Sequence record: NC_047995.1
Reading direction: 5' to 3' (one strand)
Length of the DNA: 64,000 bases
Shown: positions 37,604 through 55,388 of the stretch, in pieces
Layout: each line of letters begins with the position of its first letter
Position numbering within the stretch: position 1 is the first letter of the stretch
Made by a program: the position numbers and the translations under genes
Notes under the pieces: generated by a model
What the model saw: only the letters and a program-made list of their open reading frames with translations
What the model was told of the DNA's origin: nothing
Databases searched by the model: none

Positions 37604-39220
37604 ATGTCATTCGATCTTCGTCAAAACTTACTGCTTGTTCGTGACGCTTCCCTGACAGGCAAACCGCTGTTCTACTTCTACACTGCAATGGGCCGCGTCA
37701 TGGTCCTGACTGGTGACGTGCTGCGTGAAATCCTTGAGCGTCAGAAAGAGGGTACACTCTGCACCAACACTTACTGGGGATTCGTATCAGACCCTACGTT
37801 GGAAGTTTGGTCGTTCGATGATAACAATGACCTAATGCTTCACCACCGCATCGGCAAGTCCTGCAAAACGTTTCTGCCTTACGAAATGATTGCGAGTGCG
37901 CATGACGGGTTCAAGCCAATCAATGGCATGTTCATTGAAGACAGCTTGCACCGCATCATCAAGATTCATCTCAAGGCAACTTGTCGTGAAGAACAAAAGA
38001 TTACGTGGTTCGCCGATCTGCCTGAGCCTGAGATGCGTAGCATGTTGTTGTCACTGGGTCTGGGCCCGCTGCGCGTAGAGCGTGAAGACAAAGAGGGTCT
38101 GGTCAAGCTGCATGATCAGTGGCTGGAAGACTTCGATGACAAATACAAATACACGCATAACACACTCGGCCTCGATGAAGACGAAAAGATTCCTGCTGAT
38201 TATCGCCCTGAACGTATTCGTGACATTACGAAACGTATGATGGCTGGCACCAAGACACAAGAGATGATGGACCAGACTCTGAGTGACTTGCTGGGCCAGT
38301 GTCGTATCAGAGGCGATGTGCCTATGCCTAACAGCAAGTTCAATCGCAGTCAGTTGACCTGCTACTACGCAACGCATTTGATCTTTGCGCATGACGCAGA
38401 CGAAAAGCTGCGTAGCTTGATTGATAATCCGCAGTTCCTCGTTAACTTCATCTACGGCTGGTACCCTGATTATACGTGGATTACGATCAACGAAGAAACG
38501 TTCGACTATCAACAGTCACTGGTACGCGCTGCGCTGATCTCCCTCAAGAGCCATGTGCAGAATGAAATCGGTACGTACAAACTTGTACACGGCATGGTTA
38601 CGTTCACTGAGGACTTTGATCCACACGCGAAAGACAGGCCAGAAGAAGTAGAGGACGAGGAAGAGTACGACGAGGAAGAAGATGACGACGCAGAGCAGGA
38701 CGTTATCGACTACCTGCGCACTCGTAGTGAAGACGAACTACGCGCCGTTGCAATCAAGAGAAAAATGATTACCTCGCGTAAAGCAAAAACGCTGGACAAG
38801 GAAGAGCTTGTCGAAGTGTGCGCTGACTACTACGGCTCGGAGCTGCCTGAAGACTTCGACGAAGCAGAAGAAAAGGAACAGGAGCGCGTTCCTACGCCTC
38901 GTAAATTCCCTGCGCTGTCTAACGCGTCCAGTATTAAATACGATATCATCCGCAGCATTCTGAGCACTGCGCGTCGGTATAAGACGCAACCTGTACGCAT
39001 TAAGAAGACTGATCGTAATGCCCGCAAAGAGGCAGAAGTCAACGAGCGTAAGAGAGTGATCGACACTCTCCGCGATGCTGTCAACGATAACTGGTTGGAG
39101 TCTCTGCCTGCAAATACGTTAACGGCGCTTGCGTACTCTCTTACTAAGATGAAAGACAATGATCGCTACCCACGTGACTGTGCTTTCCTGAAAGAACTAA
39201 TTAAACACGCGGTCAAGTGA
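37604..39220 (+). CDS. Multidomain protein with two HeH-like modules and an acidic tract
   Basis: Modules at 38009-38122 and 38714-38830; EEVEDEEEYDEEEDDD tract. Confidence 0.8.
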   Translation: MSFDLRQNLLLVRDASLTGKPLFYFYTAMGRVMVLTGDVLREILERQKEGTLCTNTYWGFVSDPTLEVWSFDDNNDLMLHHRIGKSCKTFLPYEMIASAHDGFKPINGMFIEDSLHRIIKIHLKATCREEQKITWFADLPEPEMRSMLLSLGLGPLRVEREDKEGLVKLHDQWLEDFDDKYKYTHNTLGLDEDEKIPADYRPERIRDITKRMMAGTKTQEMMDQTLSDLLGQCRIRGDVPMPNSKFNRSQLTCYYATHLIFAHDADEKLRSLIDNPQFLVNFIYGWYPDYTWITINEETFDYQQSLVRAALISLKSHVQNEIGTYKLVHGMVTFTEDFDPHAKDRPEEVEDEEEYDEEEDDDAEQDVIDYLRTRSEDELRAVAIKRKMITSRKAKTLDKEELVEVCADYYGSELPEDFDEAEEKEQERVPTPRKFPALSNASSIKYDIIRSILSTARRYKTQPVRIKKTDRNARKEAEVNERKRVIDTLRDAVNDNWLESLPANTLTALAYSLTKMKDNDRYPRDCAFLKELIKHAVK

Positions 39221-39255
39221 ACCGTAAACAATACCTATTATTGAAGGGAAACAAA

Positions 39256-39675
39256 ATGAAAAAGAAAACCGTACTTGTCCTGAACCGCATAGCACTTATC
39301 ATGAACGACGACATGGTGCAGAAGTTTGGCGAACTCGCTAACGAGAATCGTGAACGTGCCTCCGACCTGAACATCATCATGCTGTCCAAGATGCAACAGG
39401 CTGTGAACTTGGCTCTGGCTAATGAGAATCCAGAAGCGTGTTGTCGTGCTGATATCGCGTGGACTGAATGTGGCCTTATCTCAACGTCTGGCTTCTTTGT
39501 GATTGCAACTACGGCAGACGATGAAGTGACGAACCACTTCGAAGACCACGACTACCTGAACCATTTGCGTTCGATTGAACGTATTGCACTGGAGAGCGGG
39601 TTCAAGTTGCAAGTCGAGCCTATTCGTGCGTTGTCTCCGTTCGATAAAACCGAAATCCCTGCATCAATGAAATGA
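39256..39675 (+). CDS. Hypothetical protein
   Basis: AAGGG SD before ATG 39256. Confidence 0.75.
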   Translation: MKKKTVLVLNRIALIMNDDMVQKFGELANENRERASDLNIIMLSKMQQAVNLALANENPEACCRADIAWTECGLISTSGFFVIATTADDEVTNHFEDHDYLNHLRSIERIALESGFKLQVEPIRALSPFDKTEIPASMK

Positions 39676-39683
39676 GGTGACCC

Positions 39684-39983
39684 ATGACACGCAAACAAAT
39701 CCTGATGAATGATGTTGCTATCGTCCTGACAATGAGTGAGCGCCGTGCGTTCCTCGGTCCGAAAGCTGACGGTTTTGTGTATCTACCCTCGAAAGAGGCC
39801 CTCACGAAGTTTGAGGCGCATATCAAGAAGTACGGCAGTCGTGATGACTATGCGTTTATTGAGCACCGTGAGCTACACTCTCTGAACTCTGCTGGCATTG
39901 TCGCTATTGCTCATGCTGTCGAATCTGACTCTGAGCGCCCTTGGCTGTGGACGAAAGAAGACTTCCGCGTTAAGCTCTGGTAA
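39684..39983 (+). CDS. Hypothetical protein
   Basis: GAGGTG SD. Confidence 0.8.
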   Translation: MTRKQILMNDVAIVLTMSERRAFLGPKADGFVYLPSKEALTKFEAHIKKYGSRDDYAFIEHRELHSLNSAGIVAIAHAVESDSERPWLWTKEDFRVKLW

Positions 39984-39991
39984 GCATAAAA

Positions 39992-40036
39992 CTGGCTAAA
40001 ATCGTGGTATCAATCCGAACCGTCCTATGATATACT
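39992..40036 (+). promoter_or_regulatory. Phage promoter class A
   Basis: CTGGCTAAAAT, then TGA-TATACT at +39. Confidence 0.8.
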
Positions 40037-40556: not shown

Positions 40557-40557
40557 C

Positions 40558-41985: not shown

Positions 41986-41991
41986 ATATAG

Positions 41992-42186: not shown

Positions 42187-42915
42187 ATGCCTACTACTTC
42201 ACGTCCTAAGACAGAAGACAAGTTCTCCCGTGTTCGTGCCTCTAAGAACTCTCCTGAGCGTCAGGCAGCGGTCGCTAAGAAAACTCCACGAGGCCCGAAA
42301 GGTTCCACGAACACCGGAGGCTTCAAAAGGGATGAAGTTGTGATGTTAATCAGCTCGCCAAAGATTCGTGATGAAGAACGTGTGTACAATCTCGTACATG
42401 CAATTCTGAGCGCGTGGAAAGCAGATGTTGGTCATGCCGAACATACAGCTGCCTCTGCCGGCATCATCAAAGTGTCACGTCGTAAGATTGAAGGCGCCCT
42501 GCGTGACCTCAAGAATACGCGCTTCACTAAAATCCCGACACTCATTAATGATATCCTGACAGGCTCTGATATCTGCGCTGAGTTTGGAATGTGGGTGTAT
42601 GTCGAGCACGACAGTCCTGATTGGATTTTCGTCCGTCTGCCTGATGACAGTACACCTGTGATTCGTGCTGATATCAGTTGTGACAAGACAGGCGAAACGT
42701 CTGCGTCTATCACAACGTCCAGTGAAGCTCTGCTGGAAACGTTCAGCGAAAGCGATGATGAGATCGAGATACTTGAATGTAACGATCAAGATATCGAAGA
42801 CCTCGAAACGAAGGCGATGCGCAAACAGCTAATCGACAAGGGCATCATTAAGCCCGAAGCTGCCGACAAGCTGCATCGCCCTGACTTGATGAAGCTGTTA
42901 GCGTACTACGCATAA
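42187..42915 (+). CDS. Protein with basic N-terminus and C-terminal HeH-like module
   Basis: Module IEDLETKAMRKQLIDKGII...DKLHRPDLMKLL at 42793-42909. Confidence 0.8.
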   Translation: MPTTSRPKTEDKFSRVRASKNSPERQAAVAKKTPRGPKGSTNTGGFKRDEVVMLISSPKIRDEERVYNLVHAILSAWKADVGHAEHTAASAGIIKVSRRKIEGALRDLKNTRFTKIPTLINDILTGSDICAEFGMWVYVEHDSPDWIFVRLPDDSTPVIRADISCDKTGETSASITTSSEALLETFSESDDEIEILECNDQDIEDLETKAMRKQLIDKGIIKPEAADKLHRPDLMKLLAYYA

Positions 42916-43073: not shown

Positions 43074-44651
43074 ATGGCACGTATCGAAACTAACACTAAC
43101 CTGGTTGGCAAAACTATCGTCCTGCTGAACGGCACCAAAGCTAAAATCGAAGATGCGATTGCATCAGGTTATAAAGTGAAAGGCCAGAGCAAGCGTATCG
43201 CCACTCGTTGTGTTGTGAAAGAAGGCGCTCACTTCCGCGAAATCGAACGCATGAACATGAGCCTGCTGGAAGACACTGGCGAAGGCTATGTAAAGTTGAA
43301 AGACGCGAAAGCTGCGAAAGCAAAACCGGCCGCCGATAAGAAACCAGCAGGCAAGAAAGACCCGAAAGCTACTGGCAAGAAACCTGCCAAGCCTGCGAAA
43401 GAAAAAGAACCTAAGGTTCGTCGCAAAACCTCCGAAGAGAAATCCGACGAGTATCAAGATCTGGCACACGCTATCATCAAAGGTGGCAAGCGCGCCAAGC
43501 CAGTAGAAATCGCTGAGATCGACGCTGACCTGACTGACACCGTAGCGCAACGTCTGGTAGACGTGCTGAACAACTCTGAGATCGCCAAGCTGTGCGCTGA
43601 CAACAAAACGCCGATTGCGAACGCTCTGGAAGTTGCATACGGCGCCGAGTTCGCTCCTGAAACAAACGTCATGCAGATCACGCTGAGCCTGCAATACGCG
43701 AAGCCTGTTGCCGTGCTGTCTCGTCCGACTCTGGAAAACGCCGAAGCCATTGCGTTACGTGCTCAAAAAATGGCGGCGCCTAAGCTGTCCATGAAGCTCA
43801 AGAAAGCGATTCGTGAAGCGTTCAACCTCGAAGACGCCAACGAGCTGGAGCTGGGCACCGTGCTTATCTCTGGCGACGAAGAATTTGTGTTCTTCGGTGA
43901 GTCTGCCAAGCACGTCGGCAAAGCGCTGCTGTATGTCGTAGCGACCGACAAATTCAAATCTGTGCTGGGCTCAACTCTGGGTGATTATGAAATCCCAGAA
44001 CTTGAGGAAGAAGAAGAAGACGCCGCCGAAGAGGAAGAAGAAGAAGAGGAAGAAGACGGCGAAGAAGAGGACGGTGAAGAAGAGGACGGCGAAGAAGAAG
44101 ATACCGCCGAATACGAATACGTTGCCGTGAACAAAGACCAGCTCGATATGGTCAATAAGAAAGTGACCGCTAAGTATCACGCTGCGTTGGCTGAACGCTT
44201 CAATACAACCGAAGAAGTTCTGATCCCGGGTCTGGTGCTGACCGATGGTGAAACGACCTTCGCTTACCTGGGCTGTGATAGCAAAGGCGGTCTGCTGGTC
44301 ATCGACTGCGGTGACGACGGCGAAGGCGAAGACGTGATGCTGTATAGCAAAGCTGATATCAAAGAGCTGGAAGACTTCAATCCTGTGCTGGGCGCTGCTG
44401 GTTCTGATGCCGATGAAGAAGACGGCGACGACGATGCGGAAGAAGACGGCGACGATGAAGAAGATGGCGATGACGAAGACGAAGACGGTGAAGATGACGA
44501 CTTCGACTTTGACGATGTACCAGAAACTGATATCGAAGATCTGACCGACGACGAACTGCGTGACCGTGTAGTTGAAGCAGGCCTGACCACTGTACGCAAA
44601 GCCGATCAGATGGACGCCGCTAAACTGCGCAAGCTGCTGAAAAGCGCATAA
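43074..44651 (+). CDS. Large modular acidic protein (basic N-domain, two repeated domains, D/E tracts, C-terminal HeH-like module)
   Basis: GAGGAG SD; strong codon bias; module at 44532-44648; paralogous domains shared with 44734. Confidence 0.9.
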   Translation: MARIETNTNLVGKTIVLLNGTKAKIEDAIASGYKVKGQSKRIATRCVVKEGAHFREIERMNMSLLEDTGEGYVKLKDAKAAKAKPAADKKPAGKKDPKATGKKPAKPAKEKEPKVRRKTSEEKSDEYQDLAHAIIKGGKRAKPVEIAEIDADLTDTVAQRLVDVLNNSEIAKLCADNKTPIANALEVAYGAEFAPETNVMQITLSLQYAKPVAVLSRPTLENAEAIALRAQKMAAPKLSMKLKKAIREAFNLEDANELELGTVLISGDEEFVFFGESAKHVGKALLYVVATDKFKSVLGSTLGDYEIPELEEEEEDAAEEEEEEEEEDGEEEDGEEEDGEEEDTAEYEYVAVNKDQLDMVNKKVTAKYHAALAERFNTTEEVLIPGLVLTDGETTFAYLGCDSKGGLLVIDCGDDGEGEDVMLYSKADIKELEDFNPVLGAAGSDADEEDGDDDAEEDGDDEEDGDDEDEDGEDDDFDFDDVPETDIEDLTDDELRDRVVEAGLTTVRKADQMDAAKLRKLLKSA

Positions 44652-46828: not shown

Positions 46829-48098
46829 TCACGTATTCAACCACGACGAGAAGCAATTGCTCCTGTCAGTGGCTGAGTCTAAATATCTGGTGCGTCTTGA
46901 TTGCCCCGACTATTTGAAGAAGTCAAAACACTCGATTGAAATTCGTCACACGGTAACCAATCGCGGCGAGCAACGTCGAAGCGGTGTTGTGAATACAACG
47001 TTCGTTCCGCGTATTCATACCTCAACTGTGCAGCGTCTGGTTCGTGAAATCCGCGACTCGGCGGGTGTAGCTGCTTCCACAAGTTTGGCCGCGTTGTTTG
47101 AACTCGGGCTCGGTGTGCCGAAGCAACGTGATATTGCAACGTACCTGCGTGACTACTCGCGTGAGAACGATAAGAAGGGTGTGGGCATCAAGTATATCCG
47201 CAAACTGATTAACGAGTATCATCGCAAGCACCGTCACAGTTTCGCTGGTAGTCGCTGGCTGATGCCTGCTGTCTACACGGCGAACATGCTGAACATGCAG
47301 TCCTTCATTCATCTGAAAGAAGACGGCTACAGCAAGAAGGTCAAAGTGCCTGACGGTCTGCCTGTCGTTCTGATCTACCAGAACACCAACCATGCGAAAG
47401 CAGAGTTCACCTTGTGTGACGCATTCATGATAAGCCCGCTAGGTTATCCGATGCCGTTCGCGCAGATTGCATTACGTCCTGAGTTCAAAGGCGCGCCGAA
47501 AGTATTCCATTCGAAAGCGCTGCGTGGTCAGGGTATGTATAGCATGGTGATGGGCATCATGCACTGGGAGAAAGGCGATGCGCTCTCTCACTTCCGTGAG
47601 TTGACTGCGATTGACGACGACCCGTACCTGACGTTGTTGAGTAACCCGCAGTATGCTGATCGTCGTTCGCCTGAATATCAAGCGTTGCTGGACAAACGTG
47701 CTGAGTATGCGGAACAGCGTCAGGAGCATAACGAAGTGATTGCTAAGTATGGCAACACTACGCGGGCCCTCAAGCCTTCTCAAGTGGAGCGCTTGGAGAA
47801 AGCTGAGGAGTTCTTCAAAGAACGCAAATCGTTTATGGACGACTTTGATAAGTTCGAGAAGAAAGAGAACCACCACGCGGCTAAGAAGTTCTCTGTAGCC
47901 AGTGCGCAGTTCGCGGCCGTTGATTGTGGAACCATCGCTGACCGTTCAACGTATATGTCTGTTGCGTCCGGCCTCGACAAGGTAAACAAGATTCTCACTA
48001 AGTGGGGATTTACCACAGTCGATACTGTTAATAGTAGTTTGAAGAAGTCTATCCTTACATTCGACCCAACAAACGCAACACGCGTATGGTCACTGTAA
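46818..48098 (+). CDS. Hypothetical basic protein with coiled-coil segment
   Basis: GAGGG SD; 426 aa. Confidence 0.8.
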   Translation: MFYDHVFNHDEKQLLLSVAESKYLVRLDCPDYLKKSKHSIEIRHTVTNRGEQRRSGVVNTTFVPRIHTSTVQRLVREIRDSAGVAASTSLAALFELGLGVPKQRDIATYLRDYSRENDKKGVGIKYIRKLINEYHRKHRHSFAGSRWLMPAVYTANMLNMQSFIHLKEDGYSKKVKVPDGLPVVLIYQNTNHAKAEFTLCDAFMISPLGYPMPFAQIALRPEFKGAPKVFHSKALRGQGMYSMVMGIMHWEKGDALSHFRELTAIDDDPYLTLLSNPQYADRRSPEYQALLDKRAEYAEQRQEHNEVIAKYGNTTRALKPSQVERLEKAEEFFKERKSFMDDFDKFEKKENHHAAKKFSVASAQFAAVDCGTIADRSTYMSVASGLDKVNKILTKWGFTTVDTVNSSLKKSILTFDPTNATRVWSL

Positions 48099-48124
48099 AC
48101 ACCGTATCTGAGGAGATAACGCAA

Positions 48125-51082
48125 ATGTCTAACAACAATAATCTGGGCGCTGCCGCAACATTCGGTGCTGAAACGCAGAAGATGTTGACCGATCAGCAAC
48201 GTCGTTCGCAGTCTGCCGAAAGCGGCCACGTAAACAAATGCACCATCGTTGTGCTGACCTCGCTGAACGCACACAATCGTTTCTCGTATCTGTCCGCTGA
48301 CGAGCAATTGATTGAACGTCCGATCGAAGGCAAAGTGATGGACCGTTTGCCGAAGCTGATTGAACGCGCCTCTGGTGCTTCCACTGATCCGAACAGCGCG
48401 TATCACATTCTGCATCCAAACAACGGCGTGCCTACTCGTATCGACGAGCGCATCAAAGTAGGCGAAGGTGATTCGGTCATCGTTTCATATACTGTAAACA
48501 AAGCAGTGTCAGAGATGTATGGCAGTTTATCGCTCGCTCTGTTTAGTGCTGGTGATGGTGATCTCGCTGACCTGGCGGCTGAGTTTGGTATTCACTCCAT
48601 CTCAATCGTTGAAGAAGCGAAAGCTCCTGATTACATCAAAGCCCTCACCGATCAGGTGGAAGCTCTGAATATTGTAAATCTCACTAGCATTGATGAAGCT
48701 GACGGCGCATTCGAAAAACCTGTCATCGACTACAGCGCTCTGCCTGGCAATCCAACTAACGTGTTGTCTGGCGCTGTTCGTACTTTCATTATGCAAACTA
48801 TCAGCGGCGAAGTCTTCGCTGCAATTCCAAATAACGGAGAACTGAACGTGAAACCAACTAACACCCCGACCCCTGTTACTCTGGACGAAGACTTCGACGC
48901 CGAAGACGAAGTGCTTGATCAGAACGGCGGCGAAGGCGAAGACGACGAAGAAGCGACAGGCACCGACCTGTTCGGCTATAAAGCCGAAGCGCTCACCGTC
49001 GAGCAAATGACAGAAGCGCTCGAAGCTCTGTCCTACGATGTTAGCGCGATGGACGAAGACGGCATCCGCGAATCGTTTGAAACTGAACAGCAGATCTGGC
49101 TGGCCAACAACGACAACGCCGAAGATGGCGAAGAAGAGGACGAAGAAGAAGACGGCGAGTTCGACGCTGCTCTGTATCTTGGCCACCTGCTGGCTGCCGA
49201 CGAACTTGATCGTACGGCTCTGAAAGTTCTGGTGCGTACTCAAGACCTCAAAGTGATGAAGTCTGATACCGAAGAAACGCTGACTGCGAAACTGCTGGAA
49301 CTGGTTGAAGGTGCGACCGAGCAGGAAATGGCTGAACTGATCAACACCTTCGTAGGCGCGCTGCAAGAGCGTGAGATCGATTGTCCTAACCTGCTGGCTG
49401 CTCTGTCGTCTGATGGAGACGAAGAAGAACAGGACGACGAAGAAGAAGAAGAAGATGAAGACGATTCTGAGGAAGAAGAATCCGAAGATGAAGACGAATC
49501 TGATGCCGACGAAACGCAAGCGCAGATCGACGCCGTTACCGATCCTCTGGACTACTTCCAGTTCGCTGGTGGTTCTCTGACTGCTGAACAACGTGCTGCT
49601 GCCGTTGAAGCGATGGGCGAAGATGTTACTGGCCTGAACATCGTGCAGGTAATGAAAGCGTTCTCTCGCATTCAGAGCCAGACCTCTGAGTTCGATGCCG
49701 AAGCGCAGGACGAAGCTGAGTCCGAAGGCAATACCGAAGAGCTGGTCGCGCTGCTGTCTCAGTACGATGACGCTACCGTGCAGCACATCGCAGAAAGCCT
49801 GGGCGTTAACGTTGACGAATGCGAAACCGCAGACGAAATGATCGACGCGATTGTTAACGGCGGCACCGAAGATCAGTTCGCTGCTGTTGAAGAAATCGCA
49901 ACCAACTACGGTGTTGACCTGTCCGAAGTTGCTGACGGTGATGATCTGGACTTCGTTGATGCGCTGCTGGCTGTACTGCCTGCGTTCCTGAACGACGACG
50001 AAGTTGCCGAGCAGGACGAAGACGAAGAAGACGCGGAAGAAGCTGACGAAGCCGAAGCTGACGTTGCTACTGAAAACGATAGCCTGCGTTTCGTTAAAAA
50101 CGTTGACACCAAAAACTCTGTCGGCCCGATGCTGTCTGTCGAAATGGATCAGGCACTGGTAATCAACTTCACTCTGACTGACGGCGATACCTACCGCGAC
50201 GTTGAATCTGAGCTGGCTGATGTTAACGGCTTTAACTACCGCTTCCCGTTCAATCTGGGCCGCGCGGACAAAGCACCTGGTGCTATGCTCCTGCCAGTGC
50301 AGTCTCTGATGGAAATCGTTGAGCGCGTGAACACCACTCGCTTCCTCGCAGATCCTAAAACGTTCAACGTGGCCGCGTGGGCAGAAAGCCTTGAAGCTAC
50401 TCTGAGCGAAGAAATCGCAAGCGCTCTGTATGCAGGTCGTATCGAAGACGGTCTGGACCCGAGCGAAGCAGGTATCGTTGTTGGTGACTTCATCGACGAC
50501 GAAGAACTGGAAGAAGCGCAAGCGCTGGGCCACATCGACCCTGAGCAATTCGCTGAACTGTCTGGTGATCATCTGCCGATTGCAAGCCTGTACAACGCTC
50601 GCTCTCGCGTTCGTCCTGTGCAAGTTGATACCGCACACGTTGCGCTGCACACCACCGTAATGAACATCGCTGTCCCAGGCTTCTGGGGTGATGCACCTGT
50701 TCAGCGTATGGTGCAGGCCGCAGTCAACCGCGTTATCGCTCTGTCTGAAACTGTCGAAGGCGTTAAGGTATACGCTGCGTTCACGATGGAATCTGCGGCA
50801 TTGCTGAACAATGATCGTCTGTTCGAAGCACTGTCCACTCTGCGTGAAATCGAAGGCGCCCAGTCCTACTCTGCTGTAGACGCTGCGAACTTCGATGAAG
50901 CCGAAGACGTGATTGAAGTTGCAAGCGCTCTCGATACGCGTGACCTGCCGCTGTCTATCCTGTCTGGTGGTCTGGCTGCCGCAACGTTCGACAACGGTGG
51001 TGACCTGACTGTCCTGGTGCCGTGCTTCTCTACCGAAGAAGAAGATGAATCGGAAGATGAAGACGAAGGCGACGACGAATAA
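48125..51082 (+). CDS. Very large, highly acidic protein with about four Rho-N/HeH-like modules between D/E linkers
   Basis: GAGGAG SD before ATG 48125; modules such as LTVEQMTEALEAL..MDEDGIRE and YDDATVQHIAESLGV..ETADEMIDAI. Confidence 0.9.
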   Translation: MSNNNNLGAAATFGAETQKMLTDQQRRSQSAESGHVNKCTIVVLTSLNAHNRFSYLSADEQLIERPIEGKVMDRLPKLIERASGASTDPNSAYHILHPNNGVPTRIDERIKVGEGDSVIVSYTVNKAVSEMYGSLSLALFSAGDGDLADLAAEFGIHSISIVEEAKAPDYIKALTDQVEALNIVNLTSIDEADGAFEKPVIDYSALPGNPTNVLSGAVRTFIMQTISGEVFAAIPNNGELNVKPTNTPTPVTLDEDFDAEDEVLDQNGGEGEDDEEATGTDLFGYKAEALTVEQMTEALEALSYDVSAMDEDGIRESFETEQQIWLANNDNAEDGEEEDEEEDGEFDAALYLGHLLAADELDRTALKVLVRTQDLKVMKSDTEETLTAKLLELVEGATEQEMAELINTFVGALQEREIDCPNLLAALSSDGDEEEQDDEEEEEDEDDSEEEESEDEDESDADETQAQIDAVTDPLDYFQFAGGSLTAEQRAAAVEAMGEDVTGLNIVQVMKAFSRIQSQTSEFDAEAQDEAESEGNTEELVALLSQYDDATVQHIAESLGVNVDECETADEMIDAIVNGGTEDQFAAVEEIATNYGVDLSEVADGDDLDFVDALLAVLPAFLNDDEVAEQDEDEEDAEEADEAEADVATENDSLRFVKNVDTKNSVGPMLSVEMDQALVINFTLTDGDTYRDVESELADVNGFNYRFPFNLGRADKAPGAMLLPVQSLMEIVERVNTTRFLADPKTFNVAAWAESLEATLSEEIASALYAGRIEDGLDPSEAGIVVGDFIDDEELEEAQALGHIDPEQFAELSGDHLPIASLYNARSRVRPVQVDTAHVALHTTVMNIAVPGFWGDAPVQRMVQAAVNRVIALSETVEGVKVYAAFTMESAALLNNDRLFEALSTLREIEGAQSYSAVDAANFDEAEDVIEVASALDTRDLPLSILSGGLAAATFDNGGDLTVLVPCFSTEEEDESEDEDEGDDE

Positions 51083-51098
51083 TAATATCGTCTGAAAC

Positions 51099-51128: not shown

Positions 51129-51142
51129 GGGGATCTGTAAAC

Positions 51143-51964
51143 ATGACTCAAGAAGTAGACCACGGAGCAAACATCATTAAGATGGTTGGTGACCGTGATG
51201 ATAAAATCCGCGAACTGACTGCCAACCTGTCAGAAACTTCTGGTCGCAAAGAAGACCTTGACGCTGAACTGCGTGAACTGTCGCTTGACCATCTGGCACT
51301 CAAAATCAAGATGCGTAGCCGCGAACGTGAACACGCCGCAGAGATTGAACTGCGCGATGAACGCATCCGCGAAGTTGTTGGTTTCTGCAACGAGCAAACA
51401 GTCGAAGTAAAGAACATTCGAACTGAACTCGAATCTGTAAAACAAAAGAGTGAACCGGCTGCTGCCCTGCCATTCGTTCTGCAATTGATAATGTCTGCTG
51501 GTGTCGCACACTACCATGCGATTATCGCACAATGCGCCACCGCTACTGTTAACCGCGCAACAAATAAAGTTGCCCGCGAACTGCGTGAAATTTATGATAA
51601 CGATAATGTAGTGAAGCATCCTTCGCTTTATCGTGTCGCTGTACGACTGTGTACTCAGCTCGGCGTTTCGCCTCCATCTCGCACTGACATGTTGGCGGAT
51701 CTCAAAGAGTACGTGGTTCAGAACCTTGACCTGTACCTGAAAGACCCGCAGTACGCTGCGTCTGAATCTGCACTGCGCCAGATTATCGCTGCGAAAAATA
51801 ATGCCGCACATTATGGCGCTTACGGCCGTGGTGTGTATCAGATGTTCGACTGGCTTCCAGCACTGACTGCTGACCTGGACGACATTGAAGATGACTACAA
51901 CGATTTGGTGGAACAATCTGTCTATCAAGTCTGTCGTAATCTGATTAACGATAGCTTTTCATAA
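51143..51964 (+). CDS. Coiled-coil hypothetical protein
   Basis: Heptad-rich N-half; TCTGTAAAC motif abuts the ATG. Confidence 0.8.
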   Translation: MTQEVDHGANIIKMVGDRDDKIRELTANLSETSGRKEDLDAELRELSLDHLALKIKMRSREREHAAEIELRDERIREVVGFCNEQTVEVKNIRTELESVKQKSEPAAALPFVLQLIMSAGVAHYHAIIAQCATATVNRATNKVARELREIYDNDNVVKHPSLYRVAVRLCTQLGVSPPSRTDMLADLKEYVVQNLDLYLKDPQYAASESALRQIIAAKNNAAHYGAYGRGVYQMFDWLPALTADLDDIEDDYNDLVEQSVYQVCRNLINDSFS

Positions 51965-51984
51965 TCTGTAAAAGTTACCTGTAA

Positions 51985-52006
51985 TCGAAACTGTAAACAC
52001 TAATTG
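51985..52006 (+). promoter_or_regulatory. Class B motif (tcgaaa[t]CTGTAAACa[c/t]taa), candidate late promoter
   Basis: Three near-identical copies at about 51985, 52627 and 52684, all intergenic upstream of strongly biased genes. Confidence 0.55.
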
Positions 52007-52057
52007 AAGTTCGAACCGAGCAACAAGCTCACACTTATAAAATCCCGGAGCATTACA

Positions 52058-52600
52058 ATGGCCAAAGCATCAAAGACTTCCCTGGTTCCTACCCTGGTTT
52101 CTCGCATCGCTAAGAAATCTGGTTCTATCGGTACTTCCAAAGTTAAGCCATCTGAACTGCCGCACGATATCCTGATCGAAACGGTACAGGCTGTTGAGCT
52201 GATTGGTTTTATCACCGACCGCACTGAAAACAGCGTTACCATTCGTCACAAACGTGGTCACGGTTCTTCTGCGCAAGTTGTTTCTACCTTCGGTCCGAAC
52301 CAAATCCTGTCTGTGCTGGGTGAAGCTGGTGGTCACGGTAGCGTAACCGCTCTGATCAACGCGCCGGTCCGTGAGTACAAAGGCTTCAACGTTAAATACA
52401 AAGGCGCGACCATCGTTGCTACCTCTGTTGAGACTGGCGAAGTAGTTGAAGTGAACACCGCACTGCCTGGCTTTACCGTTCGCGCGACCGTGAACGAAAC
52501 TGCTGCTGCTAAAAAGTACGGCACGCCTGCTCCAACCAAAGCTAAAAAGCTGGACAAAGGCGACAAAGCTGGTAAAGTGGTCAAGAAAGTAAAAAAGTAA
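52058..52600 (+). CDS. Beta-rich protein with Lys-rich termini (possible Sm/SH3-like barrel)
   Basis: GGAG SD before ATG 52058; very strong codon bias. Confidence 0.8.
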   Translation: MAKASKTSLVPTLVSRIAKKSGSIGTSKVKPSELPHDILIETVQAVELIGFITDRTENSVTIRHKRGHGSSAQVVSTFGPNQILSVLGEAGGHGSVTALINAPVREYKGFNVKYKGATIVATSVETGEVVEVNTALPGFTVRATVNETAAAKKYGTPAPTKAKKLDKGDKAGKVVKKVKK

Positions 52601-52626
52601 TTAAGTCTGACGAAGACTTTTAACTT

Positions 52627-52707
52627 TCGAAATCTGTAAACATTAAGTATGCAGCGAGATAAAAATGTTTCGCTGCCTGTCTCTCGAAATCTGTAAACAT
52701 TAATTGA
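52627..52707 (+). repeat. Tandem class B motifs (tcgaaatctgtaaacattaa x2) flanking a hairpin
   Basis: 20-bp direct repeat; gcagcga..tcgctgc hairpin between the copies. Confidence 0.85.
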
Positions 52708-52744
52708 AGCAACATCGCTTCTAATCAAACAGGAAATAAATATC

Positions 52745-53548
52745 ATGGCAAAAGCTAAAGCAACCGCAAATACCGCAGCAATCGTTCTGGCCAAAATGCT
52801 GGGCGTCGTAGTCGAAAACGCCAGCGCCGCTGATATCGCAGCGATTCTGAAAGAAGCCGGTCTGACTGTTGTTGGCGGTAAAGTTGTTAAAGCTGAAAAA
52901 GGCGGTAAAGCTGCTAAAGGCAAAAAGGCCAAAGCACCTACCGTTGCTGAAATCGTCGCTGCTGTTAAGGACGAAGAAGAACTGGACATCTCCGGCGTTG
53001 ACGAAGACACCCTGCGCGAAGCAGTAGTCAAAGCCAAGCTGTCTACTGCCAAGAAGGCTAAAGCGCTGGACGAAGACGACCTGCGCGAACTGCTGGAAGA
53101 AAAACTGGGTGGCGAGTCCGACGAGGACGACGAAGAAGAGGACGAGGACGAGGAAGACGACTCGGACGACGAAGATGAAGACGGCGACGACGAAGACGAA
53201 GACGACGACTCGGATGATGAAGACGAAGACGACGACTCGGATGATGAAGACGAGGACGACGAAGACGACGAAGACGGCGACGATGAAGAAGAAGAGGACG
53301 ATGAAGACGAAGATGAGGACGAAGATGATGAAGATGATCTCGACCTCGACTCTCTCGACAAGAAAGAGCTGTTAGCCCTGGTCCTCGAACACAAGCTGGC
53401 TCCGGCCAAGAAGGCTAAGAAAATGGACGAAGATGAACTGCGCGAACTCTGCGAAGAACACTTCGGCGGTGAAGACGACGAAGACGAAGATGAAGACGAA
53501 GACGACGAAGACTTCGACGATGAAGACGAAGACGAAGACGACGAATAA
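52745..53548 (+). CDS. Extremely acidic protein with two HeH-like modules and long D/E tracts
   Basis: Modules at 52988-53104 and 53345-53461; near-pure D/E tracts between and after them. Confidence 0.9.
   Translation: MAKAKATANTAAIVLAKMLGVVVENASAADIAAILKEAGLTVVGGKVVKAEKGGKAAKGKKAKAPTVAEIVAAVKDEEELDISGVDEDTLREAVVKAKLSTAKKAKALDEDDLRELLEEKLGGESDEDDEEEDEDEEDDSDDEDEDGDDEDEDDDSDDEDEDDDSDDEDEDDEDDEDGDDEEEEDDEDEDEDEDDEDDLDLDSLDKKELLALVLEHKLAPAKKAKKMDEDELRELCEEHFGGEDDEDEDEDEDDEDFDDEDEDEDDE
53201..53254 (+). repeat. 27-nt tandem repeat encoding DDDSDDEDE x2
   Basis: gacgacgactcggatgatgaagacga(a/g) twice. Confidence 0.85.
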
Positions 53549-53766
53549 GTCCTGATCTGACGTAGGCGCGCCCCTCTAGTTCTGACGAATGAGCGAGGGG
53601 CAAATAATCGAAAAAATATCTCGATTATTTTCGTAAAAAGTTTTAAAATTCCTGTTGTTGAATGTTGAACATAATAATGTAAGACAACAGGAACACAAAC
53701 CTGAACAAATTTATCTTTTCATCCAGCGGTGAAAACGCCGCATCAAATATAAAGTAAGGAAATATC

Positions 53767-54285
53767 ATGTCTAAGAAAGCAATCAGCGGCCTGAACAAAG
53801 AAATCCGCGCAATCGAAAAATCTGAAAAAGCTCTGGCCAAAACCGCTGGCGAGATCACTAAGCAAGCTGAAAGCCTGTCCGAGCGTCGTGCTGGTCTGGC
53901 CGCTCAGGTTGAAGCTCTGCAAAACGACGGCGCCGCGCCTGCTGCAAAACCTGCTAAAGCTGCTAAGCCGGCCAAAGCAGAAAAAGTGAAAGCTGAAAAG
54001 CCAGCTAAAAAAGCAAAAGCTGAAAAAGCTGAAAAGCCTGCTAAAGCTAAAAAAGCCAAAGCAGAGAAAGCTGAAAAGCCTGCTAAAGCTGACAAAAAAG
54101 CGAAAGCCGCCAAAGCAGAAAAACCTGCTAAGGCAGAAAAAGCCGGTAAGAAAGCGAAAGCTGACAAATCCGCTAAGCCTGCTAAAGCAGAAAAAGCTGG
54201 CAAAAAAGTGAAAGGCGATAAGCCTGCTAAAGCCGGTAAGAAAAGCAAAAAAGAAGCCGAAGACTTCGACTTCGATATGGAATAA
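53767..54285 (+). CDS. Histone H1-like / AlgP-like basic protein (KPAKA repeats)
   Basis: N-terminal coiled coil, ~100 aa of (AE)KPAKA(K) repeats, acidic tip EDFDFDME; AAGGA SD. Confidence 0.85.
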   Translation: MSKKAISGLNKEIRAIEKSEKALAKTAGEITKQAESLSERRAGLAAQVEALQNDGAAPAAKPAKAAKPAKAEKVKAEKPAKKAKAEKAEKPAKAKKAKAEKAEKPAKADKKAKAAKAEKPAKAEKAGKKAKADKSAKPAKAEKAGKKVKGDKPAKAGKKSKKEAEDFDFDME

Positions 54286-54317
54286 GCAAGCGCCGCGCAC
54301 TAGCGGTACTTGATCTG

Positions 54318-54349
54318 AAAGGGCAGCGCTGACGAGCGTTTGCCCTTTT
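54318..54349 (+). terminator. Rho-independent terminator
   Basis: aaagggca-gcgct..agcgt-tgcccttt followed by tg. Confidence 0.75.
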
Positions 54350-54382
54350 GTCATATCTAGCACAATTTTTGAGGCCATAGCC

Positions 54383-54877
54383 ATGTCAGCCGAACACCTG
54401 TTAAATGACGACCTTCCCGACGATACCCTCCCTCTTAAAGTTCCTACCCCGCAAGAGAAGCCTTCATACTTCGACCTCGTGTCGTTGCGCATTGAAGCCG
54501 CAGCCCGTCTTGCACGTTCCCTTAAAACTCTTAAAGACGCCAACGTATTCGGTGACGACAACACCGTGAACAGCGATCTCATGCTCACTAAAGCGCTGGA
54601 GGTTGCCGAGCAACACTGGGCCAGTATCTGCAACGGCGTAGTGCCTATCAAAGACTCGCATGGCAGAGAGTCAATGCGCGACAATCTTCCTGCGTGTATC
54701 GAAGCGTTTCGCATTATCGTAATGGAACACGCGCAACGCCAGGCACTGGAGCTTGAATGCCGTAACGCTATCGACCACAAAGGTGGCTTCAAGATTCTGA
54801 CGCGTACTCAACTGCTCTACATCGAACCTAAACACGTCTGCGATGGAACATGCGACCATGACTCAAAAACTGTCTGA
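54383..54877 (+). CDS. Hypothetical protein
   Basis: GAGG SD. Confidence 0.75.
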   Translation: MSAEHLLNDDLPDDTLPLKVPTPQEKPSYFDLVSLRIEAAARLARSLKTLKDANVFGDDNTVNSDLMLTKALEVAEQHWASICNGVVPIKDSHGRESMRDNLPACIEAFRIIVMEHAQRQALELECRNAIDHKGGFKILTRTQLLYIEPKHVCDGTCDHDSKTV

Positions 54878-55388
54878 GCAAATCAACCGCTATTTTAATC
54901 TCATGGAGAAAATCCGTGAGCAACTCTTCCGTGTGTTGAATGTGTCCGAGCGCTACCTGTGCATCGTGAGCTTCAACACCCAGCACCAGGCAATGCAGTG
55001 CGACCTTGTTAGTCGTGAGAGCCTGTTGCCTGCCAAGCTGCTCGAAGGCCTGCGCGGCCAAGAGCTTGTAGTGTACGGCACCATTACTGCCCAGATTGAG
55101 AAGTGGGTAGCAGACGGTATGGTCGACGACTTCCCTATTGCACAGGACGCCGACACGTATGCGCAGTACCGTAAGCTGGTGGACCCTGAAACGGAGCCGA
55201 CTGTCACTGACGCCAACTTGGCCGAGCACGTTGCGTCCTTGTGTAAGTCAGACGCTCTGAAATACGTTGACCCACTGAGCAAGTATGAGCTGGCTATCCT
55301 CTGCAAGGCATGGGGACTCGCACAAGACGCCAGCGAGACTGTCATGCTATCTCTCGTCAAGGGCTATATTCTGCGCCGCTATTCTTAA
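54858..55388 (+). CDS. Hypothetical protein with C-terminal SAP/HeH-like segment
   Basis: LSKYELAILCKAWGL...ETVMLSLV. Confidence 0.7.
   Translation: MTQKLSEQINRYFNLMEKIREQLFRVLNVSERYLCIVSFNTQHQAMQCDLVSRESLLPAKLLEGLRGQELVVYGTITAQIEKWVADGMVDDFPIAQDADTYAQYRKLVDPETEPTVTDANLAEHVASLCKSDALKYVDPLSKYELAILCKAWGLAQDASETVMLSLVKGYILRRYS

What the first reader, a model, noticed from the sequence alone, without database searches (positions are those of the whole stretch)
37604..55388. A shared ~39-aa HeH/Rho-N-like module spread over many acidic proteins: candidate phage nucleoid/condensate system
Seen: five gap-free copies align: IEDLTDDELRDRVVEAGLTTVRKADQMDAAKLRKLLKSA (44532), IEDLETKAMRKQLIDKGIIKPEAADKLHRPDLMKLLAYY (42793), ISGVDEDTLREAVVKAKLSTAKKAKALDEDDLRELLEEK (52988), LDSLDKKELLALVLEHKLAPAKKAKKMDEDELRELCEEH (53345) and LRTRSEDELRAVAIKRKMITSRKAKTLDKEELVEVCADY (38714). 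There is a sixth at 38009, about four looser copies in 48125, and single ones in 10259, 16166 and 54858: about 13 copies in about 9 genes, nearly always next to long D/E tracts. Established: the helix-extension-helix fold (Rho-N, SAP, LEM) tethers proteins to nucleic acid or to a common partner, as LEM does to BAF. Inference: a common address tag that recruits a set of disordered polyanionic proteins to one scaffold (phage DNA, RNAP or a replication compartment). I know of no description of such a system.
Basis: partly seen in the sequence, partly recalled or inferred. Interest (0 to 1): 0.88.

Follow-up and report, generated by a model that had tools for sequence, protein, structure and literature searches.

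The report
Shuffled mini-domain in acidic phage proteins
A small (~44-residue) three-helix domain, always set among long runs of aspartate and glutamate, is shared by four otherwise unrelated non-structural proteins of the jumbo Erwinia phage Alexandra; it is real, unannotated and exchanged between genes, but there are far fewer copies than first claimed and its role (probably anchoring acidic tails in the phage DNA-handling machinery) is inferred, not shown.

Summary
The window is the right end of Erwinia phage vB_EamM_Alexandra (266.5 kb, non-nucleus-forming "hairy" jumbo myovirus).

**Observation.** The five quoted copies lie exactly where stated.
- Four are recovered by leave-one-out HMMs (E 1.8e-7 to 1.8e-11).
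- The fifth (gp328) is recovered by profile-profile comparison (E 3.7e-7).
- A sixth, degenerate copy in gp321 gets weak support (E 1.1e-4).
- The other ~7 claimed copies (gp334 x4, genes at 10259, 16166, 54858) are noise.
- A whole-genome scan finds 5 copies in 4 genes, not 13 in 9.

**The module.**
- AlphaFold2 predicts a confident helix / Lys-rich loop with a short helix / helix unit (core pLDDT 93).
- No curated family reaches threshold. Only sub-threshold SAP, LEM, Ish1 and Rho_N hits and loose fold matches to Rho_N-annotated viral models appear, so "HeH-like" is plausible but unproven.
- It behaves as a cassette: deleted, swapped, split off or gained among orthologues.
- Among 1.84 billion proteins only 29 match. 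Some lie in phage DNA-replication gene clusters, and nearly all modules sit beside D/E tracts.

**Verdict.** This is a new, phage-restricted domain-plus-polyacid cassette. Its function is probably docking within DNA replication or nucleoid machinery. The "condensate system" reading is untested.

The parts
37604..39220 (+). gp321 (Alexandra_321, 538 aa, net charge -23): large N-terminal region, D/E tract, module, basic C-terminal region
   Evidence: ORF and annotation. The module region cross-hits phrog_30618 at E 1.7e-8.
38012..38122 (+). Possible degenerate sixth copy (gp321 aa 137-173, ADLPEPEMRSMLLSLGLGPLRVEREDKEGLVKLHDQW)
   Evidence: hhalign of the core profile against the gp321 orthologue alignment gives E 1.1e-4, probability 57%. 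As a single sequence it is not above the null, and it has no Pfam hit.
38639..38704 (+). D/E tract of gp321, immediately upstream of its module
38714..38845 (+). Module copy in gp321 (LRTRSEDELRAVAIKRKMITSRKAKTLDKEELVEVCADY, followed by YGSE)
   Evidence: (leave-one-out E 1.8e-7). It is deleted in three orthologues and replaced by a gp337b-like version in two.
42187..42915 (+). gp328 (242 aa): basic N-terminus, globular part, short acidic stretch, module at the extreme C-terminus
42793..42909 (+). Module copy in gp328, the most divergent one, with a neutral linker (GIIKPEAADKL)
   Evidence: Profile-profile comparison gives E 3.7e-7. In AD1 and SNUABM_16 it is a stand-alone ORF of about 48-50 codons by six-frame ORF; a 48-aa representative of it is P0017.
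43074..44651 (+). gp329 (525 aa, net charge -65): N-terminal domain shared with gp330, Lys-rich linker, two D/E tracts, DFDFDD motif, module at the C-terminus
   Evidence: (phrog_33433).
43998..44111 (+). First D/E tract of gp329
44406..44516 (+). Second D/E tract of gp329, ending in the acid-aromatic motif DFDFDD (44499-44516)
44532..44648 (+). Module copy in gp329
   Evidence: (leave-one-out E 6.7e-8).
52745..53548 (+). gp337 (267 aa, 45% D/E, net charge -97): small N-terminal alpha/beta part, Lys-rich linker, module, 82-aa D/E tract, module, D/E tail with an invariant Phe
   Evidence: 45% D/E; alignment of 21 orthologues; AF2: modules pLDDT 83-89, D/E tracts about 50.
52988..53104 (+). Module copy gp337a
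   Evidence: leave-one-out E 1.8e-11. The AF2 model of window 52973-53119 has pLDDT 83.9.
53108..53353 (+). Central D/E tract of gp337, variable in length among orthologues
53345..53461 (+). Module copy gp337b
   Evidence: leave-one-out E 2.6e-8.
53462..53545 (+). C-terminal D/E tail of gp337, ending DEDFDDEDEDEDDE (53504-53545), near-invariant across the genus
53767..54285 (+). gp339 (172 aa, net charge +26), a neighbour and possible partner that carries no module: coiled coil, K/A/P-rich basic repeats, conserved acidic-aromatic tip EDFDFDME (54259-54282)
48086..51082 (+). gp334 (998 aa, net charge -182): the four claimed looser copies are not supported. It has its own internal duplication (aa 294-472 and 489-663) and four D/E tracts.
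   Evidence: E 0.13; self-alignment E 2.9e-4.
54858..55388 (+). gp341 (176 aa): no module in Alexandra. Orthologues in six related phages carry an inserted acidic stretch plus a divergent module.
   Evidence: E 5.2e-5.

Best explanation
SHOWN.
- The repeated element is a previously unannotated, independently folding mini-domain of about 44 residues: helix of 10, a 5-residue loop, a short (often Lys-rich) helix, then a helix of 12, often followed by an aromatic-Gly-x-acidic cap.
- Together with flanking poly-D/E tracts it forms a cassette that has been duplicated, deleted, swapped and split off among at least four (five to six in relatives) unrelated proteins. Their genes lie outside the structural gene block of the 'hairy' Erwinia/Dickeya/Yersinia jumbo phages.
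- The same cassette occurs in a few metagenomic phages, including proteins encoded inside DNA-replication and recombination gene clusters.

INFERRED.
- The domain is a divergent member of the helix-extension-helix class (nearest Rho_N/SAP).
- It works as a small docking unit that anchors a long polyanionic, DNA-mimicking tail on DNA or on a DNA-bound protein of the phage replication, topoisomerase or nucleoid machinery.
- The tail could compete with DNA for basic surfaces, either host nucleoid proteins or the phage's own Lys-rich proteins gp336, gp339 and gp330.
- The tail could also fold back on the basic linker to tune binding, as D/E repeats do next to eukaryotic DNA-binding domains.

The confidence given (0.35) is for the inferred function. 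The domain-and-cassette description itself I hold at above 0.85.
For: - Family reality: leave-one-out and profile-profile statistics; 52 significant instances (46 unique) in 12 related genomes plus the window.
- Fold: isolated module mean pLDDT 83.9, core 93, pTM 0.63. The same secondary-structure elements are predicted for both modules in full-length gp337, while the D/E tracts score about 50.
- Cassette behaviour: clean deletion in the gp321 orthologues of L015, L022 and L023. In L017 and L021 the gp321 module is 61-63% identical to gp337b modules but only 41-42% to other gp321 modules.
- More cassette behaviour: the gp328 module is a separate ORF of about 48-50 codons in AD1 and SNUABM_16. 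A copy has been gained in gp341 orthologues.
- Coupling to D/E tracts beyond this lineage: 34 of 43 modules in the representative hits have a flank of at least 40% D/E within 30 residues, and 16 lie at the C-terminus.
- DNA-metabolism context: the Alexandra genes lie just upstream of the topoisomerase II genes, on the strand opposite the structural block.
- Further context: P0015 (4 modules) follows PDDEXK_1 and AAA_24 genes in a PolA/primase cluster. P0033 (2 modules) lies between PolA and a RecA-like gene, near a clamp loader.
- HeH resemblance: sub-threshold SAP, LEM and Ish1 hits are the most recurrent Pfam echoes; Rho_N at E 0.012 and SAP at E 3.6e-4 in relatives. Five Rho_N-annotated viral models match at TM 0.64-0.71 and rmsd 1.6-3.5 A.
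- D/E repeats next to DNA-binding domains are known to act by intramolecular electrostatic autoinhibition (PMC10250230, found).
Against: - No HeH-clan model reaches its gathering score.
- Foldseek against the PDB gives no significant hit and no Rho, SAP or LEM entry. The BFVD hits to Rho_N models have E 2.8-7.9.
- The Rho N-terminus of E. coli scores below shuffled controls.
- The modules are not net basic (8-10 K/R against 7-11 D/E). The basic linker is missing from the gp328 and gp329 copies, which weakens a simple DNA-binding model.
- No expression timing, localisation, binding or virion-proteome data are available for any carrier. Every carrier is annotated 'hypothetical'.
- The N-terminal domains of P0014 and P0015 could not be identified, so the replication link rests on gene neighbourhood only.
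Confidence: 0.35

Rival explanations
1. The module is a common address tag, LEM-like in logic, that recruits a set of disordered polyanionic proteins to one scaffold. Together with the neighbouring Lys-rich proteins this forms a charge-driven condensate or phage nucleoid.
For: - One module type occurs on four unrelated acidic proteins, with two copies in gp337, which would give multivalency.
- Strongly basic neighbours are present: gp339 at net +26, the gp336 K-rich tail and the gp329/gp330 K-rich linkers.
- A second shared short motif, DF[DE]F[DE], occurs in gp329 and gp339 only.
- The phage lacks a chimallin nucleus and was used as a non-nucleus outgroup (PMC10299810), so another way of organising its DNA is conceivable.
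Against: - There are only 5 (6) copies in 4 genes, not a broad set.
- Paralogous copies differ at most surface positions (15-49% identity), while each is conserved among its own orthologues. That argues for copy-specific rather than common partners.
- The module is dispensable in gp321 of three phages.
- The most acidic proteins without the module (gp334, gp325, gp145) would not be addressed.
- There is no evidence of condensates, and nothing comparable appears in a 2026 jumbo-phage review.
Confidence: 0.18
2. An intramolecular or chaperone role. The module is a folded, locally basic island that pairs with its own D/E tract to compact or mask it. Alternatively the whole acidic protein acts as a nucleoplasmin-like chaperone or decoy for basic DNA-binding proteins, and the module only provides solubility or structure rather than targeting.
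For: - Module and D/E tract are coupled across lineages.
- The Lys-rich linker (KKAKK) in the gp337 and gp321 copies faces acidic flanks.
- D/E tract length varies freely while the modules stay fixed.
- D/E-repeat autoinhibition is established (PMC10250230).
Against: - The gp328 and gp329 modules lack the basic linker.
- The stand-alone 48-aa module ORFs in AD1 and SNUABM_16 have no acidic tract to mask.
- Strong conservation of the polar residues of each copy among orthologues suggests an external ligand.
Confidence: 0.15
3. The carriers are virion-internal or ejected acidic proteins, or scaffold-like assembly factors, and the module is an assembly or packaging signal.
For: - Jumbo phages package many internal proteins (own knowledge).
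- Another strong D/E-tract protein, gp145, lies beside the capsid and prohead-protease genes.
Against: - All module genes lie in the + strand block with small genes and topoisomerase genes, not in the - strand structural block.
- The metagenomic relatives sit in replication clusters.
- The structural-block D/E protein gp145 has no module.
Confidence: 0.08
4. There is no real domain. The similarity is a compositional artefact of charged, helix-prone low-complexity sequence.
For: - The copies are rich in D, E, K, L and A.
- Two of the 29 library hits are repeat-driven false positives (P0020, P0037).
Against: - Gap-free, full-length alignments show a fixed hydrophobic pattern.
- Leave-one-out E-values reach 1e-11, against a best noise value of about 0.3.
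- The best reversed-sequence score is E 0.014, against 5e-10 or better for true copies.
- AF2 predicts a confident, reproducible fold.
- Presence or absence in orthologues has clean boundaries.
Confidence: 0.02

Closest known systems
Helix-extension-helix domains: Rho_N (PF07498), SAP (PF02037), LEM (PF03020), Ish1 (PF10281)
   Same: - Size is similar (about 35-45 aa).
- There are two main helices joined by an extended, basic-residue-containing connector.
- Helix 1 carries an 'ELR' pattern and helix 2 an 'M/L-x3-EL-x2-L' pattern (by eye).
- These domains also occur as small add-on modules on diverse nucleic-acid-associated proteins.
- These families are the most recurrent sub-threshold Pfam echoes.
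- Rho_N-annotated viral models are loose fold matches.
   Different: - No model reaches its gathering score.
- The connector looks about 3 residues longer than in Rho_N (by-eye comparison with a consensus recalled from memory, not computed) and is predicted to form a short helix.
- No PDB sequence or fold match was found.
- The N-terminus of E. coli Rho does not align above chance.
- The module is net neutral to acidic and always embedded in D/E tracts, which is not typical of SAP, LEM or Rho_N.
D/E-repeat disordered regions next to DNA-binding domains (HMGB1 acidic tail and the class described in PMC10250230)
   Same: Long consecutive D/E runs lie directly adjacent to a small, putatively nucleic-acid-binding domain. 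Tract length is variable while the folded unit is conserved.
   Different: - These are eukaryotic nuclear proteins with proven DNA-binding domains.
- Here the binding activity of the folded unit is unknown.
- The tracts here are extreme (gp337 is 45% D/E, net charge -97).
Acidic C-terminal tails of single-stranded-DNA-binding and replication proteins (E. coli SSB tip, T7 gp2.5 and gp4, T4 gp32 A-domain). Own knowledge; not tested here.
   Same: - Acidic tails, sometimes with a critical aromatic residue, act as DNA mimics and docking sites in replisomes.
- gp339, gp329 and gp337 carry conserved acid-aromatic motifs.
- P0015 and P0033 are encoded in replication clusters.
   Different: - No OB fold or SSB family was detected in any carrier.
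- Classical tails contain no folded modules.
Phage DNA-mimic proteins (Ocr, ArdA, Arn). Own knowledge.
   Same: Highly acidic phage proteins expressed to bind host DNA-binding proteins.
   Different: - Those are compact folded mimics with patterned surface charge, not low-complexity D/E tracts with interspersed mini-domains.
- No Pfam match was found for any carrier.
Chimallin phage nucleus of chimalliviruses
   Different: - Alexandra served as a comparison genome alongside the non-chimallin representatives in the study defining that family (PMC10299810).
- The nucleus is a protein shell, not charge-patterned disordered proteins.

Membership tests
HeH clan (SAP / LEM / Rho_N / Ish1 / HeH) | Sequence match to a curated family model at or above its gathering score | tested here: not met
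   - Full proteins: no HeH family at E <= 1.
- 47 isolated modules: SAP in 8 (best E 5.2e-4), LEM in 6 (best 3.1e-3), Ish1 in 5 (best 0.023).
- Every HeH-clan hit whose bit score was printed is below its cut-off: SAP 20.5 bits against 23.9 and Rho_N 16.0 bits against 24.9 in relatives; LEM 13.4 bits against 24.
HeH clan (SAP / LEM / Rho_N / Ish1 / HeH) | A unit of about 35-45 residues with two helices joined by an extended connector | tested here: met
   AF2 on a 47-sequence alignment predicts H11-20, H26-30 (short) and H34-45, with core pLDDT 93 and pTM 0.63. The same elements appear for both modules in full-length gp337. This is a prediction, not an experimental structure.
HeH clan (SAP / LEM / Rho_N / Ish1 / HeH) | Three-dimensional similarity to solved or modelled HeH domains | tested here: inconclusive
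   - PDB Foldseek: 7 hits, all E > 6, none SAP, LEM or Rho.
- BFVD: five Rho_N-annotated viral models at TMq 0.64-0.71 and rmsd 1.6-3.5 A, but E 2.8-7.9.
- Foldseek has little power for 40-residue helical units.
Rho_N specifically | Detectable similarity to the N-terminal helical bundle of a bona fide Rho | tested here: not met
   hhalign of the module profile against E. coli Rho residues 1-60 scores 6.3, against a shuffled mean of 7.8 +/- 1.5 (131 of 150 shuffles score at least as high). The best hit in full-length Rho lies elsewhere at E 0.22.
HeH clan (SAP / LEM / Rho_N / Ish1 / HeH) | Binding of nucleic acid (SAP, Rho_N, LEM-like) or of a defined partner such as BAF (LEM) | not testable with these tools
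   Needs EMSA, NMR or pull-down experiments.
D/E-repeat-regulated DNA-binding proteins | A consecutive D/E tract adjacent to the folded binding unit | tested here: met
   Tracts of 22-82 residues abut 4 of the 5 modules in Alexandra. 34 of 43 modules in library representatives have a flank of at least 40% D/E.
D/E-repeat-regulated DNA-binding proteins | The folded unit binds DNA or RNA and is autoinhibited by the tract | not testable with these tools
The module charge is near neutral.
SSB-type replication hubs with acidic tails | OB-fold or known SSB domain N-terminal to the acidic tail | tested here: not met
   No SSB or OB family was found for the Alexandra carriers or for P0014 and P0015 in Pfam, PHROGs or PDB sequence searches. 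tblastn hits are all 'hypothetical'.
SSB-type replication hubs with acidic tails | Gene located in a replication or recombination module | tested here: met
   - P0015 lies after PDDEXK_1 and AAA_24, with PolA and a primase-helicase upstream.
- P0033 lies between PolA and a RecA-like gene, near a clamp loader and a dCMP deaminase.
- The Alexandra carriers lie 0.1-18 kb upstream of the gyrB-like and parC-like topoisomerase genes.
   5 copies are recovered and 1 is borderline. The gp334 x4, 10259, 16166 and 54858 copies are not recovered.

The most novel reading that the evidence does not exclude
Non-nucleus-forming 'hairy' jumbo phages may organise their replicating DNA with a multivalent, charge-patterned protein network. 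In it, the shuffled HeH-like modules, the poly-D/E tracts, the DF[DE]F acid-aromatic tips and the Lys-rich proteins (gp339, gp336, gp330) interact to form a replication or nucleoid condensate. That would be a protein-only, membrane-less counterpart of the chimallin nucleus, with the module as its valency-setting sticker.
Probability: 0.1. Interest if true: 0.8.

Novelty: new variant of a known kind. Interest (0 to 1): 0.45.

Why it matters
Most genes of jumbo phages are 'hypothetical', so any recurring, transferable module gives a handle on them. This work defines a compact domain that no curated library recognises. It shows the domain moving as a cassette with polyacidic tracts between genes and between phage lineages. 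It also ties the cassette by gene neighbourhood to DNA replication and topoisomerase functions.

If the module proves to be a DNA or replisome anchor for DNA-mimicking tails, it would explain a class of extreme acidic phage proteins. It would also give a small tag for localising proteins to phage DNA. If instead it mediates a charge-driven compartment, that would be a new mode of phage genome organisation. Either way the claim is now small and testable: one 44-residue domain and four carriers.

Tried and rejected
1. Seed HMM of the five copies and an orthologue-enriched HMM on the window, both strands, and on the whole genome. No further copies were found.
2. hhalign of the core profile against every + strand ORF of at least 80 aa, with reversed-sequence controls. 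Only the five copies stand out.
3. Pfam scans of the claimed looser copies (gp334 segments, gp341 C-terminus, gp321 aa 137-173, genes at 10259 and 16166, gp337 N-terminus). No HeH hits.
4. Profile search of PDB sequences. Only chance hits at E >= 0.27.
5. Foldseek of full-length gp337 against the PDB. Uninformative, because disordered tracts dominate the chain.
6. Foldseek of the isolated module against the PDB. No HeH entry.
7. Identifying the N-terminal domains of the multi-module proteins P0014 and P0015. My recollection that P0014 resembles T4 gp32 was not borne out by Pfam, PHROGs, PDB or tblastn, so I dropped it.
8. E. coli Rho N-terminus against the module profile. Below shuffled controls.
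9. phiR1-37, which has transcriptome and proteome data. The 47 kb I scanned has no module, and tblastn over 50,697 phage records finds none in phiR1-37. No expression data could therefore be transferred.
10. Promoter and terminator scan of the region. Promoter-like sites were not enriched; terminator-like sites were above the shuffled expectation (33 found against 21.3 +/- 3.9), but none bears on the module genes.
11. Scan of GTDB genomes. One hit, an Alexandravirus-like contig mis-binned in a MAG.
12. Literature searches for HeH/Rho_N in phages, for proteomics of AD1 and Y3, and for condensates in jumbo phages. Nothing relevant was found; the Y3 paper is not held.

Full report
**Identity of the window.**
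Megablast places window 43000-55400 at 100% identity on Erwinia phage vB_EamM_Alexandra (MH248138.1, 266,532 bp, genus Alexandravirus). The window ends at the genome end. All genes between 37.6 and 55.4 kb are annotated 'hypothetical'. The next genes downstream are gyrB-like and parC-like topoisomerase subunits.

The long block of - strand genes annotated between about 43 and 186 kb of the genome corresponds, in the related phage Y3, to tail, sheath, capsid and prohead-protease genes. The genes of interest therefore lie outside the structural block. Alexandra is not a chimallin (nucleus-forming) phage; it was used as a comparison genome in the study that defined that family (PMC10299810).

The five quoted peptides are encoded exactly at the stated coordinates. 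They lie in gp321 (37604-39220), gp328 (42187-42915), gp329 (43074-44651) and gp337 (52745-53548, two copies).

- Leave-one-out HMMs built from four copies recover the omitted copy for four of the five, at E 1.8e-7 to 1.8e-11. Background in 474 + strand ORFs starts at E about 0.3, and the - strand gives nothing better than E 5.
- The gp328 copy is too divergent for this test. Its orthologue profile, however, aligns end to end with the profile of all other copies at E 3.7e-7, probability 93%.
- PHROG profiles built by others cross-match the same regions: phrog_30618, the gp337 family, hits gp321 and gp329.

The core observation is therefore confirmed.

**How many copies?**
I enriched the profile with orthologues from four related phages. 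I later added eleven IMG/VR genomes, giving 52 significant instances, 46 of them unique. Scanning all six frames of the complete Alexandra genome finds exactly five copies in four genes and nothing else below E = 1.

- Profile-profile comparison with orthologue alignments gives modest support to the 'sixth' copy (gp321 aa 137-173; E 1.1e-4, probability 57%).
- It gives none to gp334 (E 0.13), Alexandra's gp341 or any other neighbour.
- Against single sequences, every match other than the five is within the reversed-sequence null. The best reversed score is E 0.014; true copies score 5e-10 or better.
- The looser segments also have no HeH-type Pfam echo.
- gp334 does contain an internal duplication of its own (aa 294-472 and 489-663, E 2.9e-4).

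'About 13 copies in about 9 genes' is thus an over-count. The supported figure is 5 (perhaps 6) in 4.

**What the module looks like.**
AlphaFold2 on a 47-sequence alignment of the isolated module (window 52973-53119) gives mean pLDDT 83.9, core 93 and pTM 0.63. The predicted elements are a helix (11-20), a five-residue loop, a short helix (26-30) and a helix (34-45).

In full-length gp337 both modules are predicted with the same pattern of three helices at pLDDT 83-89, while the D/E tracts sit near 50. The majority-rule consensus is LxxLxEDELRxxVVxAKLxTxxKAxKMDxxxLRELxxxx, commonly followed by an aromatic-G-x-[DE] cap. Conserved positions are mainly hydrophobic.

The linker is Lys-rich in the gp337 and gp321 copies (KKAKK, SRKAK) but not in gp328 or gp329. 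Each module is roughly charge-neutral overall.

**Is it HeH / Rho_N-like?**
For the assignment:
- The most recurrent sub-threshold Pfam hits of the 47 instances are SAP (8), LEM (6) and Ish1 (5).
- Relatives give Rho_N at E 0.012 and SAP at E 3.6e-4.
- In the viral model library, five of the named matches are 'Rho termination factor N-terminal domain' proteins, at TM 0.64-0.71 and rmsd 1.6-3.5 A.

Against it:
- Nothing reaches a gathering score.
- A profile search of PDB sequences finds only chance hits.
- Foldseek against the PDB finds no SAP, LEM or Rho entry with either model.
- The BFVD matches have non-significant E-values.
- The Rho N-terminus of E. coli scores below shuffled controls against the module profile.

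By eye, compared with a Rho_N consensus recalled from memory, the helix-1 'ELR' and helix-3 'M-x3-EL' spacings fit Rho_N with a connector about 3 residues longer. That would explain the half-domain Pfam hits. I rate 'divergent HeH-class domain' as plausible (about 60%) but not demonstrated.

**Cassette behaviour.**
- The module is cleanly absent, with a shortened acidic tract, from gp321 orthologues in three phages.
- In two others the gp321 module is 61-63% identical to gp337b modules but only 41-42% to other gp321 modules. That points to replacement by recombination between genes.
- The gp328 module is a separate ORF of about 48-50 codons in AD1 and SNUABM_16 (a 48-aa representative is P0017).
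- gp341 orthologues in six phages carry an inserted acidic stretch plus a divergent module (E 5.2e-5) that Alexandra lacks.

The module therefore travels with acidic sequence and is gained and lost on a short evolutionary scale.

**Distribution.**
- tblastn of one module against 50,697 phage records finds it in 57 records. All are Erwinia, Dickeya or Yersinia 'hairy' jumbo phages: Alexandravirus, Y3, Yoloswag, the JA11 group and fHe-Yen9-02.
- gp337 itself has only 11 clustered relatives among 5.8 billion proteins, none with a Pfam domain.
- The module profile searched against 1.84 billion representatives gives 29 proteins at E <= 1e-3. Two of them (P0020, P0037) are repeat-driven false positives.
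- The rest include proteins unlike any Alexandra gene, with two to four modules separated by acidic linkers: P0014, P0015, P0019, P0030, P0033 and P0036.
- Of 43 modules in these representatives, 34 have a flank of at least 40% D/E within 30 residues, and 16 lie at the C-terminus.
- The only hit in 185,579 GTDB genomes is a mis-binned Alexandravirus-like contig.

**Functional context.**
- P0015 (four modules) is encoded directly after PDDEXK_1 nuclease and AAA_24 ATPase genes, in a cluster with PolA, dUTPase and a primase-helicase.
- P0033 (two modules) lies between PolA and a RecA-like gene, near a clamp loader and a dCMP deaminase, on a 137 kb contig.
- In Alexandra the carriers lie just upstream of the topoisomerase genes.
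- The neighbours include strongly basic proteins. gp339 has a coiled coil plus K/A/P-rich repeats (net +26), gp336 has a K-rich tail, and gp329 and gp330 have K-rich linkers.
- A second short motif is shared. DF[DE]F[DE] forms the conserved C-terminal tip of gp339 and lies directly before the gp329 module. 'DFDFD' occurs nowhere else in the genome.
- gp337 ends in a near-invariant DEDFDDEDEDEDDE.

**Most likely mechanism.**
Shown: a foldable mini-domain, obligatorily paired with polyacidic tracts, shuffled among proteins encoded outside the structural block, some of them in replication modules.

Inferred: it is a small HeH-type docking unit that places a polyanionic, DNA-like tail on DNA or on a DNA-bound protein of the replication, topoisomerase or nucleoid machinery. 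The tail would compete with DNA for basic surfaces and could fold back on the basic linker. D/E repeats next to DNA-binding domains are known to act through such intramolecular electrostatics (PMC10250230). Acidic-aromatic tails are established replisome docking elements (own knowledge: E. coli SSB, T7 gp2.5 and gp4, T4 gp32).

I put about 0.35 on this functional reading, and much higher confidence (above 0.85) on the domain-and-cassette description.

**Rivals.**
- A purely intramolecular or chaperone role (0.15).
- Virion-internal proteins (0.08).
- Compositional artefact (0.02), effectively refuted.

**Novelty and score.**
I found no description of this module, or of these proteins beyond 'hypothetical'. 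If it is HeH-like, the fold class is known. What is new is a divergent, phage-restricted family fused to poly-D/E tracts and moving as a cassette, hence 'new variant of a known kind'.

Interest is 0.45. It is a clean, testable domain discovery in jumbo-phage dark matter with a suggestive replication link. However, the striking system-level claim (many copies, a condensate) is not supported by the data at hand.

Noticed in passing
window 54259-54282 (gp339 C-terminus); 44499-44516 (gp329); 53504-53545 (gp337 C-terminus): A conserved acid-aromatic short motif. EDFDF[DE]ME is the C-terminal tip of basic gp339 in 11 of 12 phages (DDFEFEME in the twelfth). DF[DE]FDD lies directly before the gp329 module. 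DEDFDDEDEDEDDE ends gp337. 'DFDFD' occurs only in gp329 and gp339 in the whole genome. It is reminiscent of SSB, T7 gp2.5 and gp4 acidic tips (own knowledge).
   Followed up: partly
window 53767-54285 (gp339) and 52058-52600 (gp336): gp339 has an N-terminal coiled coil followed by about 110 residues of K/A/P-rich repeats (AKPAKAEK-like, net charge +26). This resembles histone H1 or AlgP tails. gp336 ends in a conserved Lys-rich tail. Both sit beside the most acidic protein, gp337.
   Followed up: partly
window 48086-51082 (gp334): This 998-aa protein has net charge -182 and an internal duplication (aa 294-472 and 489-663, hhalign E 2.9e-4). Each unit holds helix-loop-helix-looking segments and a D/E tract. 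It is not detectably related to the core module.
   Followed up: partly
window 43074-44651 (gp329) and 44734-45990 (gp330): The two proteins are weak paralogues, sharing about 55 N-terminal and about 70 C-terminal residues (hhalign E 1.2e-3). gp330 is basic and lacks both D/E tracts and the module.
   Followed up: partly
L017:3541-3687, L021:4087-4233 (gp321 orthologues); L015, L022, L023 (deletions): The gp321 module has been replaced by a gp337b-like version in two related phages and precisely deleted in three. This is evidence of recombination between the module copies of different genes.
   Followed up: yes
L018:7993-8130 (AD1), L003:6769-6915 (SNUABM_16): The gp328 module exists as a stand-alone ORF of about 48-50 codons, which is a gene fission. 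It is a natural minimal construct for experiments.
   Followed up: partly
L017, L018, L020-L023, gp341 orthologues (e.g. L023:20586-20732): gp341 orthologues are about 70 aa longer than in Alexandra. They carry an acidic stretch plus a divergent module copy that Alexandra, L013, L015 and L019 lack.
   Followed up: yes
window 18223-19824: A 533-aa protein with Radical_SAM and Fer4_12 domains (E 6.5e-14). AD1 and Y3 carry a gene annotated as a radical SAM superfamily protein (PMC6143709); I did not check that it is the orthologue.
   Followed up: no
window 41558-41929 (gp327): A small acidic protein ending in a Cys-rich motif (CLVCNHEYCVCH). In relatives the adjacent small ORF carries a half-module-like ADWSDDDLRNALLENGLV (E 0.09-0.3).
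   Followed up: no
Alexandra genome 105484-107514 (gp145, outside the window; locus L009): The strongest D/E-tract protein outside the window lies beside the capsid and prohead-protease genes (by synteny with Y3_141). It has no module. Polyacidic tracts are therefore not confined to module carriers.
   Followed up: no
window 52333-53409 (- strand) and other - strand ORFs over D/E tracts: Long Ser-rich antisense ORFs (for example 358 aa) are mirror-frame artefacts of the GAN-rich D/E coding tracts, not genes.
   Followed up: no
L032 (JAVWLC010000023.1, a MAG labelled Raoultibacter sp.): A 14 kb contig in a GTDB MAG encodes a gp337 orthologue and is almost certainly a mis-binned Alexandravirus-like phage contig. 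Its D/E tract is masked with N.
   Followed up: partly
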